From: Octopus sinensis
Lineage: Eukaryota
Direction: 5' to 3'
Assembly: GCF_006345805.1 (NCBI RefSeq)
Contig: NC_043024.1
Span: forward strand, 18,910,001-18,974,000
Length of the DNA stretch: 64,000 bases
The translations under genes were made by a program, and so were the position numbers. Numbering within the stretch: the stretch's first letter is position 1; the number at the start of each line of letters is the position of its first letter. Positions 57,072 to 57,364 of this stretch are shown in pieces. The notes beneath the pieces are model-generated. The model did no database searches and was not told the DNA's origin. It was given only the letters and a program-made list of their open reading frames with translations.

Positions 57072-57364
57072 TTTGGTGGTACAGGTCGTTTATTTATGAT
57101 ATGTTCAGAATCAGTCTTATATATATTTTTTTTTTATATATAGAGGGCATTATTATACATACATGCCACACGCTAAGAGGGACATTAGTCATTTCTACCA
57201 AAAATTTTACTAATCATACCCAATGCAATTTTTCAAAGCAAGACATTTAAAAAATGAATTTAGTCTTGTATCACCTGTGATTTCGTACTTACCGCAGTTG
57301 CGACCGTACTCATCAGCAAGACTGATTCTGAACATATCATAAATAAACGACCTGTACCACCAAA
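57072..57364. repeat. Perfect 47-bp inverted repeat (57072-57118 / 57318-57364)
   Basis: Base-by-base reverse-complement identity with a 199-bp spacer. Confidence 0.95.

What the first reader, a model, noticed from the sequence alone, without database searches (positions are those of the whole stretch)
57072..57364. Perfect 47-bp intronic inverted copy of a candidate exon: possible editing or splicing hairpin created by templated insertion
Seen: 57072-57118 is the exact reverse complement of 57318-57364, which lies inside candidate exon 1 (LWWYRSFIYDMFRISL codons). The copy is 175 nt into the intron, so a minus-strand pre-mRNA could form a 47-bp duplex whose 199-nt loop contains the GTAAGT donor. 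The copy is embedded in TA repeats, and next to it a ~20-bp direct copy of 57596-57615 (TTTATATATAGAGGGCATTAT) appears at about 57133. Established: exon-intron duplexes (ECS) direct ADAR recoding, which is extensive in coleoids; short locally templated inserts are a signature of polymerase-theta end joining. Inference: a repair scar that may have created a new editing complementary sequence or splice modulator.
Basis: partly seen in the sequence, partly recalled or inferred. Interest (0 to 1): 0.7.

Follow-up and report, generated by a model that had tools for sequence, protein, structure and literature searches.

The report
Templated-insertion scar forming a perfect hairpin
A perfect 47-base inverted copy and a 21-base direct copy of nearby sequence were pasted side by side into a TA microsatellite between two dead mobile elements of an octopus-type genome: an ordinary, recent replication or repair scar, with no evidence that the copied sequence is an exon or that the hairpin does anything.

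Summary
57072-57118 is the perfect reverse complement of 57318-57364 (47 nt, 199-nt spacer), and 57133-57153 is a perfect direct copy of 57595-57615. Neither is expected by chance, and no other copy of either exists in the window.

The copies near 57100 are the derived ones. The 47-mer has TA microsatellite on both sides. The core of the 21-mer source at 57595-57615 is native sequence of a decayed Tc1/mariner-type transposon, as an Octopus bimaculoides copy of that transposon shows. Together they form an ~81-bp multi-template insert in a (TA)n tract next to a SINE. This is the known signature of template-switch or templated-insertion mutation. The 47-nt tract length fits a replicative (MMBIR/FoSTeS-type) switch better than classical polymerase-theta joining.

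The "exon" has no support:
- No protein among 5.8 billion clusters, which include Octopus RefSeq, shares words with either strand's ORF.
- 1.84 billion representatives gave no hit.
- 9 of the 38 GTAAGT sites in this window also follow an ATG-ORF of at least 28 codons.

Any transcript would fold into the 47-bp stem, but transcription, splicing and editing cannot be tested here. A perfect duplex would predict hyper-editing rather than selective recoding.

Verdict: a real, young, probably neutral scar of a known kind. Low interest.

The parts
56644..57057 (-). tRNA-derived-type SINE copy. Its head, GGCGCAGGAGTGGCTGTGTGGTAAG..., starts at 57057 and runs towards lower coordinates. It forms the left border of the scar.
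   Evidence: At least 10 further copies in the window at 82-94% identity. The same family occurs in O. bimaculoides locus L001 at 91% over 163 nt. The A/B-box-like motifs were read by eye only; ARAGORN and Rfam do not call it.
57058..57072 (.). (TA)7.5 microsatellite, the left remnant of the tract that received the insert.
   Evidence: TRF, period 2, 100% matches. Several other SINE copies in the window are also followed by (TA)n.
57072..57118 (+). Derived inverted copy, 47 nt, exact reverse complement of 57318-57364. Its first T is shared with the TA tract (1 nt of ambiguity).
   Evidence: Judged to be the derived copy because it has TA-microsatellite sequence on both sides, while the other arm sits in complex single-copy sequence.
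57119..57132 (.). 14-nt filler ATATATATTTTTTT between the two templated pieces. It is either a remnant of the TA tract plus a T run, or slipped/untemplated synthesis.
   Evidence: Sequence. No local template of 11 nt or more was found.
57133..57153 (+). Derived direct copy, 21 nt, of 57595-57615. After it the microsatellite-like sequence resumes (TATACATACATG).
   Evidence: The direction of copying comes: the other copy is native transposon sequence.
57318..57364 (-). Source (template) of the 47-mer, in single-copy sequence.
   Evidence: There is no coding support on either strand.
57293..57377 (-). An unsupported gene model.
   Evidence: The ORF is open as stated. No homologue was found, the exact ORF is not in the collection, and the arrangement is common by chance (9 of 38 GTAAGT sites). 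On the plus strand the same bases read as an acceptor-like TACTTACCGCAG.
57595..57615 (+). Source (template) of the 21-mer. It lies at the point where recognisable transposon homology fades.
   Evidence: The O. bimaculoides copy of the transposon reads ...ccatagtcagagTAATGCCCatTATgaaca here (codons S-I-V-R-V-M-P-I-M-N). The core of the 21-mer is therefore native transposon sequence. The family profile and tblastn follow the window copy down to 57619.
57596..58543 (-). Fossil of a Tc1/mariner-superfamily (DDE_3, PF13358) transposon. It forms the right border of the single-copy island.
   Evidence: 69% identity to intact 340-349-aa transposases (E 1e-135), and 65% to O. bimaculoides LOC128247010. 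It has four in-frame stops and a frameshift near 57645. The last ~35 residues and the terminal inverted repeats were not detectable.

Best explanation
This is a young, probably neutral mutational scar. During replication or break repair at a (TA)n microsatellite just upstream of a SINE, the growing DNA strand left its template. It copied 47 nt from the opposite strand about 200-250 bp away, giving the inverted copy. It added or slipped through a short AT/T run. It then copied 21 nt in direct orientation from the decayed end of a transposon about 440-460 bp away, and finally returned to the TA tract. The result is an ~81-bp multi-template insert (57073-57153).

The mechanism is template switching of the MMBIR/FoSTeS or 'template-switch mutation' kind. 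Synthesis-dependent end joining (polymerase theta) is the alternative enzyme route.

What is shown: the two perfect copies, their sharp ends, their position inside the TA tract, and which copy is derived. What is inferred: that it was a single event, and which pathway made it.

A by-product is a perfect 47-bp inverted repeat with a 199-nt spacer. It would form a very stable stem in any RNA made from either strand. The copied segment is not demonstrably an exon, the surroundings are SINE and transposon debris, and no function needs to be assumed.
For: - The copies are exact and unique to this locus.
- The derived 47-mer is bracketed by (TA)7.5 and ATATATA.
- The 21-mer source is native transposon sequence, by comparison with an O. 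bimaculoides copy and the family profile. Both pieces at ~57100 are therefore the secondary copies, and both templates lie on the same side within 500 bp.
- There are 0 differences in 68 copied nt, while SINE copies in the window differ by 6-18%. This implies a recent event (inference).
- The literature describes the same pattern. Complex germline templated insertions of 25 bp or more that copy first in reverse and then forward from several nearby templates number about 100 per human genome (PMC8421209). Template-switch events reach 90-125 bp (PMC9435742). Template switching creates perfect hairpin stems in one step (PMC8794818).
- Against any coding role.
Against: - No ancestral (empty) allele could be examined, so insertion, polarity and single-event status rest on sequence logic alone.
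- Microhomology at the junctions is minimal: 1 nt (T) at the left end of the 47-mer, none at its right end, and TAT(A) with a 1-nt skip after the 21-mer. An in-register TCTTAT upstream of both 21-mers has a shuffle p of only about 0.04.
- The template distances (199 and 441 nt) exceed the 100-bp and 250-bp limits used by the published detection tools. Comparable events were therefore not sampled by those tools.
- Raw reads were not available, so an assembly error cannot be excluded.
Confidence: 0.75

Rival explanations
1. One reading: 57293-57377 (minus strand) is a genuine first coding exon, and the intronic inverted copy is a newly born editing-site complementary sequence or splice modulator acting on that pre-mRNA.
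For: The ORF, the ATG and a consensus G|GTAAGT exist. The minus-strand RNA folds into the 47-bp stem with the donor in the loop (MFE -126.8 kcal/mol, z = -11). [quoted passage not shown]
Against: No protein in 5.8 billion clusters, which include O. bimaculoides RefSeq/UniRef, shares three 5-mers with the exon peptide. There were 0 hits among 1.84 billion representatives and no Pfam hit. The same ORF-plus-donor pattern occurs at 9 of 38 GTAAGT sites in the window. The plus strand reads equally well as an acceptor. The neighbourhood is SINE, LINE and transposon debris. A perfect 47-bp duplex predicts hyper-editing, not selective recoding. Conserved cephalopod sites lie in slowly evolving, conserved sequence (PMC5705066), whereas this duplex is brand new.
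Confidence: 0.04
2. The 293-bp unit 57072-57364 is a miniature inverted-repeat (foldback) transposable element with 47-bp terminal inverted repeats.
For: The perfect terminal inverted arms and short internal region look like a MITE. The window holds other small foldbacks, for example 25765-25932.
Against: There is no target-site duplication: the left flank is TATATATA and the right flank is GCCGAACA. No second copy of the arms or of the interior exists in 64 kb of very repeat-rich sequence, nor in 24 kb of O. bimaculoides. This reading does not explain the adjacent perfect 21-nt copy of transposon sequence. The left arm lies inside a microsatellite while the right arm is continuous with single-copy sequence.
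Confidence: 0.04
3. It is an assembly or consensus artefact: chimeric or mis-polished reads at a TA microsatellite created copies that do not exist in the animal.
For: The identity is perfect and the location is in a low-complexity tract where aligners and polishers fail. PMC9435742 notes that pipelines mishandle inverted fragments of tens of bases.
Against: Artefacts of that kind usually lose such inserts rather than create a clean two-template mosaic with sharp ends. Known long-read chimeras give long palindromes without a spacer (own knowledge). Nothing else in the region looks mis-joined.
Confidence: 0.07
4. There were two unrelated events. The 441-bp segment 57154-57594 is a retroposed or otherwise inserted piece flanked by a 21-bp target-site duplication (57133-57153 / 57595-57615). 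The 47-mer was copied later in a separate template switch.
For: Perfect 21-bp direct repeats flanking a segment are compatible with LINE-type target-site duplications. The minus-strand 3' end of the segment is microsatellite-like (catgtatgtata), and an A10 run lies nearby.
Against: The segment has no other copy in the window, no poly(A) adjacent to the repeat, and no protein or Pfam signal. The A10 run lies outside the supposed duplication. Two independent rare events side by side, both with zero divergence, are less parsimonious than one complex event of a documented type.
Confidence: 0.07

Closest known systems
Short-range template-switch mutations (Löytynoja and colleagues; PMC8794818, PMC9435742, PMC10710096)
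   Same: A single event writes a reverse-complement copy of nearby sequence and so creates a perfect hairpin stem. Tracts of tens of bases (up to 90-125 bp) and adjacent multi-fragment events are described.
   Different: Published scans kept only events whose switch points are within 250 bp or less, and mostly those that replace sequence in place. Here the spacer is 199 nt, a second direct template lies 441 nt away, and the event is a pure insertion into a microsatellite. No ancestral state is available here.
Complex MMBIR-type templated insertions (MMB-TI, class 'complex'; PMC8421209)
   Same: Inserts of 25 bp or more, copied first in reverse and then forward from several nearby templates. 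They are found as germline variants, about 100 per human genome, about 30 of them complex.
   Different: MMBSearch requires templates within 100 bp, and most of its junctions show at least 1 bp of microhomology. Here the templates are further away and microhomology is 0-1 nt at the 47-mer junctions.
Polymerase-theta templated insertions (TINS) in TMEJ (PMC7165422)
   Same: Locally templated direct and inverted (snap-back) inserts, rich in AT. The filler here is pure AT.
   Different: TINS are 3-30 bp, with primary tracts rarely above 10 bp and templates close to the break. A 47-nt faithful tract from about 200 bp away is atypical.
Exon-intron editing-site complementary sequences (GluA2 Q/R site; insect Syt1 ECS; PMC5705066)
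   Same: Geometry only: a sequence downstream of a putative donor is complementary to a putative exon, so a duplex spanning the splice site could form.
   Different: Known ECSs are conserved, imperfect duplexes in verified transcripts with a measured edited adenosine. Here the duplex is perfect and new, the exon is unverified, and no RNA data exist.
Inverted SINE/Alu pairs as hyper-editing substrates (PMC9989829, PMC5663115)
   Same: Young reverse-complement repeats within one transcript are the main ADAR substrates across metazoans, including octopus. If transcribed, this stem would belong to that class.
   Different: The arms here are not mobile-element copies. They are a one-off copy of unique sequence, and they are much shorter than the SINE pairs in the same window (for example 206 nt at 90%, 40082/42406).

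Membership tests
Templated insertion / template-switch mutation | The inserted sequence is identical to nearby sequence, in direct or inverted orientation | tested here: met
   47/47 inverted and 21/21 direct; unique in the window; 0 expected by chance.
Templated insertion / template-switch mutation | The template lies in cis at short range | tested here: met
   The templates lie 199 nt and 441 nt from their copies, both on the same side. This is further than the 100-250-bp windows of published detectors.
Templated insertion / template-switch mutation | Microhomology at the switch points | tested here: inconclusive
   1 nt at the left end of the 47-mer, 0 at its right end, TAT(A) with a 1-nt skip after the 21-mer, and a possible in-register TCTTAT (p about 0.04).
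Templated insertion / template-switch mutation | An ancestral allele or orthologue lacks the insert | not testable with these tools
   No searchable cephalopod genome or read set was available. The metagenome scan for the 42-nt core found nothing.
Templated insertion / template-switch mutation | Polarity: the copy at the putative insertion site is the derived one | tested here: met
   The 47-mer copy is flanked by TA repeats on both sides. The 21-mer source is native transposon sequence in O. bimaculoides.
ADAR editing-site complementary sequence (exon-intron duplex) | The paired segment lies in a real exon of a transcribed gene | tested here: not met
   No homologue for either strand's ORF, no Pfam hit, and ORF plus GTAAGT is common by chance (9 of 38 sites). 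Transcription itself could not be tested.
ADAR editing-site complementary sequence (exon-intron duplex) | A stable duplex forms between the two segments in the pre-mRNA | tested here: met
   The predicted MFE structure contains the full 47-bp stem; z = -11 against shuffles. This is an in-silico result only.
ADAR editing-site complementary sequence (exon-intron duplex) | Observed A-to-I (A-to-G) RNA-DNA differences at defined adenosines | not testable with these tools
   No RNA-seq data were available.
ADAR editing-site complementary sequence (exon-intron duplex) | Evolutionary conservation of both strands of the duplex | not testable with these tools
   No orthologous loci were available. Zero divergence between the arms points to youth, not conservation (inference).
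MITE / foldback transposon | A target-site duplication flanks the terminal inverted repeats | tested here: not met
   The flanks are TATATATA and GCCGAACA; there is no duplication of any length.
MITE / foldback transposon | Multiple dispersed copies | tested here: not met
   No further copy in the 64-kb window or in 24 kb of O. bimaculoides. The whole genome could not be searched.
Tc1/mariner-superfamily transposon (neighbouring fossil 57596-58543) | Encodes a DDE_3-type transposase | tested here: met
   E 1e-135 and 69% identity to intact 345-aa proteins carrying PF13358. The family profile matches positions 3-310 of 345.
Tc1/mariner-superfamily transposon (neighbouring fossil 57596-58543) | Intact ORF and terminal inverted repeats (an active element) | tested here: not met
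   Four in-frame stops and a frameshift, with the C-terminus lost. No terminal inverted repeat was detectable above shuffles.

The most novel reading that the evidence does not exclude
The locus is transcribed from the minus strand as the first exon and intron of an unannotated, lineage-specific octopus gene or lncRNA. A single template-switch mutation then gave it, in one step, a perfect 47-bp exon-intron duplex that ADAR edits heavily and that alters use of the donor in its loop. This would be a caught-in-the-act example of how cephalopod editing substrates are born.
Probability: 0.04. Interest if true: 0.55.

Novelty: new member of a known kind. Interest (0 to 1): 0.15.

Why it matters
As it stands, this is one clean textbook-style instance of a multi-template, microsatellite-associated templated insertion in a cephalopod genome. 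It is useful as an example and as a reminder that such events create perfect RNA/DNA hairpins instantly. It is not surprising to people who study template switching.

It would matter only if the segment proved to be a transcribed exon. The allele with the insert and the allele without it would then form a natural experiment on how a new double-stranded structure changes editing and splicing in an animal that edits its transcriptome heavily. Nothing found here points that way.

Tried and rejected
- **Coding test, minus strand.** Word-indexed search of 5.8 billion protein clusters with the exon peptide plus flanks found no candidate (the first attempt was too short). A full HMMER search of 1.84 billion representatives with the 95-aa ORF gave 0 hits. 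Exact look-up of eight window ORFs found none in the collection. Pfam found nothing.
- **Coding test, plus strand.** The ORF 57264-57416 found no candidate.
- **Inverted transposon C-terminus.** I asked whether the arm is the inverted 3' end of the neighbouring transposon. A weak tblastn hit (P0010 residues 303-318 on 57291-57341, plus strand, E = 5) looked positionally suggestive. The family profile gives no C-terminal match there, so I rejected it.
- **Transposon terminal inverted repeats.** Searching for them to fix the element's end gave a best local alignment no better than shuffles.
- **MITE reading.** Rejected because there is no target-site duplication and no other copies.
- **Twin-priming / retroposition reading.** The inverted piece lies on the wrong side of the A run and no retroposon hallmarks are present, so it is kept only as a low-probability rival.
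- **Rfam and tRNA scans.** Rfam on the whole window found nothing at gathering thresholds. ARAGORN on 56300-57700 found nothing.
- **Orthologue search.** A scan of JGI metagenome contigs for the 42-nt core gave 0 hits. No cephalopod genome could be searched by DNA. One O. bimaculoides locus fetched through a transposase hit carries the SINE and the transposon but not the single-copy segment.

Full report
**Observation.** 57072-57118 (TTTGGTGGTACAGGTCGTTTATTTATGATATGTTCAGAATCAGTCTT) is the exact reverse complement of 57318-57364, with 199 nt between the arms. Allowing three mismatches, these are the only two copies in the 64-kb window, and no dinucleotide-preserving shuffle gives two matches. 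It is the longest exact inverted match with arms within 3 kb in the window; the other long ones are exact runs inside imperfect inverted SINE or transposon pairs. The ends are sharp and the flanks show no residual complementarity.

Fourteen bases to the right, 57133-57153 (TTTATATATAGAGGGCATTAT) is an exact direct copy of 57595-57615. It is also unique to these two places even with three mismatches. BLAST extends it to 25 of 26 positions with one gap. A scan of 57040-57330 against the surrounding 7 kb finds no other locally templated piece.

GTAAGT on the minus strand is at 57292-57287, inside the spacer, and the copy begins 175 nt after it.

**Context.** The window is eukaryotic and extremely rich in repeats.
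- To the left, 56644-57057 is a SINE on the minus strand, with ten or more copies in the window at 82-94% identity. It is followed by (TA)7.5 at 57058-57072.
- To the right, 57596-58543 (minus strand) is a fossil of a Tc1/mariner-superfamily DDE_3 transposon. It is 69% identical to intact 340-349-residue transposases (E 1e-135) and has four in-frame stops and one frameshift.
- Both repeat families occur in an Octopus bimaculoides chromosome segment fetched through one of the transposase hits (SINE 91% over 163 nt, transposon 80% over 960 nt).
- Between the TA tract and the transposon lies about 440 bp that is single-copy within the window.

**Which copies are derived.** The 47-mer at 57072-57118 has TA-microsatellite sequence on both sides: (TA)7.5 on the left and ATATATA on the right. 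Its partner is continuous with complex unique sequence. The natural reading is that a (TA)n tract was split by an insert.

For the 21-mer the direction can be shown. In the O. bimaculoides copy of the transposon the corresponding stretch reads ccatagtcagagTAATGCCCatTATgaaca. This encodes the family's conserved ...SIVRVMxxMN... segment. The window copy follows the family down to 57619 by profile and tblastn and shares TAATGCCC..TAT beyond that. The core of 57595-57615 is therefore native transposon sequence, and 57133-57153 is the secondary copy.

Both pieces near 57100 were thus written from templates lying 199 and 441 nt to their right, one inverted and one direct, separated by a 14-nt AT/T filler. 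Together they make an ~81-bp insert (57073-57153), after which microsatellite-like sequence (TATACATACATG) resumes.

**Mechanism.** A mosaic of nearby sequence in both orientations inserted at one point is the signature of template switching.
- Germline "complex" MMBIR-type templated insertions that copy first in reverse and then forward from up to five nearby templates are documented. There are about 100 events of 25 bp or more per human genome, about 30 of them complex (PMC8421209).
- Short-range template-switch mutations reach 90-125 bp and can occur as adjacent fragments (PMC9435742).
- Such events create perfect hairpin stems in a single step (PMC8794818).
Those are 3-30 bp, with single tracts rarely above 10 bp (PMC7165422), so a faithful 47-nt tract from about 200 bp away fits a replicative switch better.

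The pathway is an inference. Junction microhomology is minimal: 1 nt, 0 nt, and TAT(A) with a skip. An in-register TCTTAT upstream of both 21-mers has p of only about 0.04. That (TA)n tracts are break- and stall-prone is established knowledge recalled from memory, not tested here. Zero differences in 68 copied bases, against 6-18% divergence among SINE copies, argue that the event is recent (inference).

**The exon.** The minus-strand ORF (MAVRLWWYRSFIYDMFRISLADEYGRNC, then G|GTAAGT) exists, but nothing supports it as coding.
- No protein in 5.8 billion clusters shares three 5-residue words with it, although that collection contains O. bimaculoides RefSeq, UniRef and EukProt entries.
- A full HMMER pass over 1.84 billion representatives gives no hit.
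- Pfam gives none.
- The plus-strand ORF over the same bases is equally orphan.
- As a null: of the 38 GTAAGT sites in the window, 9 are preceded by an ATG-initiated open frame of at least 28 codons, most of them in SINEs and microsatellites.
- Read on the plus strand, the "donor" is an acceptor-like TACTTACCGCAG.

The exon/intron labels are therefore unsupported. They are not disproved, because transcription cannot be examined with these tools.

**The hairpin.** Folded as minus-strand RNA, 57050-57390 adopts the full 47-bp stem (-126.8 kcal/mol, z = -11). The plus strand would do the same.

If the region is transcribed, this would be an ADAR substrate of the kind that dominates metazoan editomes, namely young reverse-complement repeats (PMC9989829). 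A long perfect duplex is the substrate of hyper-editing rather than site-selective recoding (PMC5663115). Conserved cephalopod recoding sites sit in conserved sequence (PMC5705066). The window also holds far longer inverted SINE pairs, for example 206 nt at 90%, so this stem is not special as potential dsRNA.

**Rivals.**
- A MITE with 47-bp terminal repeats is unlikely. There is no target-site duplication and no other copy, and it does not explain the adjacent 21-mer.
- A two-event history, with 57154-57594 inserted with a 21-bp target duplication and the 47-mer copied later, cannot be excluded. It lacks retroposon hallmarks and is less parsimonious.
- Misassembly cannot be tested without reads.
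- An idea that arose during the work was that the arm is the inverted C-terminus of the transposon, suggested by a weak tblastn hit. The family profile rejected it.

**Verdict.** The mechanism is better described as replicative template switching than as polymerase-theta joining. The "exonic ECS or splice hairpin" half is unsupported. It is a new instance of a known kind of mutation, most likely neutral, and of low interest unless RNA data show that the segment is expressed.

Noticed in passing
window 27766-27903: A ~93-bp piece of the same Tc1/mariner-family transposon (27784-27876, about 85% identical by eye to 57625-57720 of the fossil) sits inside a SINE. It is flanked by a duplicated, diverged ~19-bp SINE segment (gaagatacttgtccaatgt / gaggactacttgattcgag). 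This looks like a second, older filler-type insert.
   Followed up: partly
window 25765-25932: A ~168-bp near-perfect foldback with arms of about 68 nt (exact runs of 31 and 25 nt) and a ~30-nt loop that is itself palindromic. It is a stronger hairpin candidate than the finding; it may be a MITE or another template-switch product.
   Followed up: no
window 21201-21484: An inverted pair with exact runs of 27, 25 and 20 nt (21201-21289 against 21391-21484), MITE-like.
   Followed up: no
window 820-2306: A tandem array with a period of about 252 bp whose copies are 100% identical over 250-280 nt. It carries an ORF like the tail of a LINE reverse transcriptase. It is either very young or collapsed/expanded in assembly.
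   Followed up: no
window 40699-41232 (minus): A second, more diverged copy of the same transposon family that keeps the C-terminal ~40 residues lost in the 57596-58543 fossil. A Tc1-like 147-aa ORF at 23600-24043 also matches the family profile weakly.
   Followed up: partly
window 57115-57120 and 57577-57582: An in-register TCTTAT lies 12 nt upstream of both 21-mers. The last four bases of the 47-mer copy coincide with it, so it may be the microhomology used for the switch, but the shuffle p is only about 0.04 and the 12 nt between are not copied.
   Followed up: partly
window 57177-57188: AGAGGGACATTA, 24 nt right of the 21-mer copy, resembles its core AGAGGGCATTA with one indel. This may be chance or a trace of an earlier slip.
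   Followed up: no
L001 1-6374 (O. bimaculoides CM046623.1): The O. bimaculoides locus fetched for comparison carries a TPR-repeat gene next to the transposon-derived LOC128247010, plus SINE copies of the same family as in the window.
   Followed up: no
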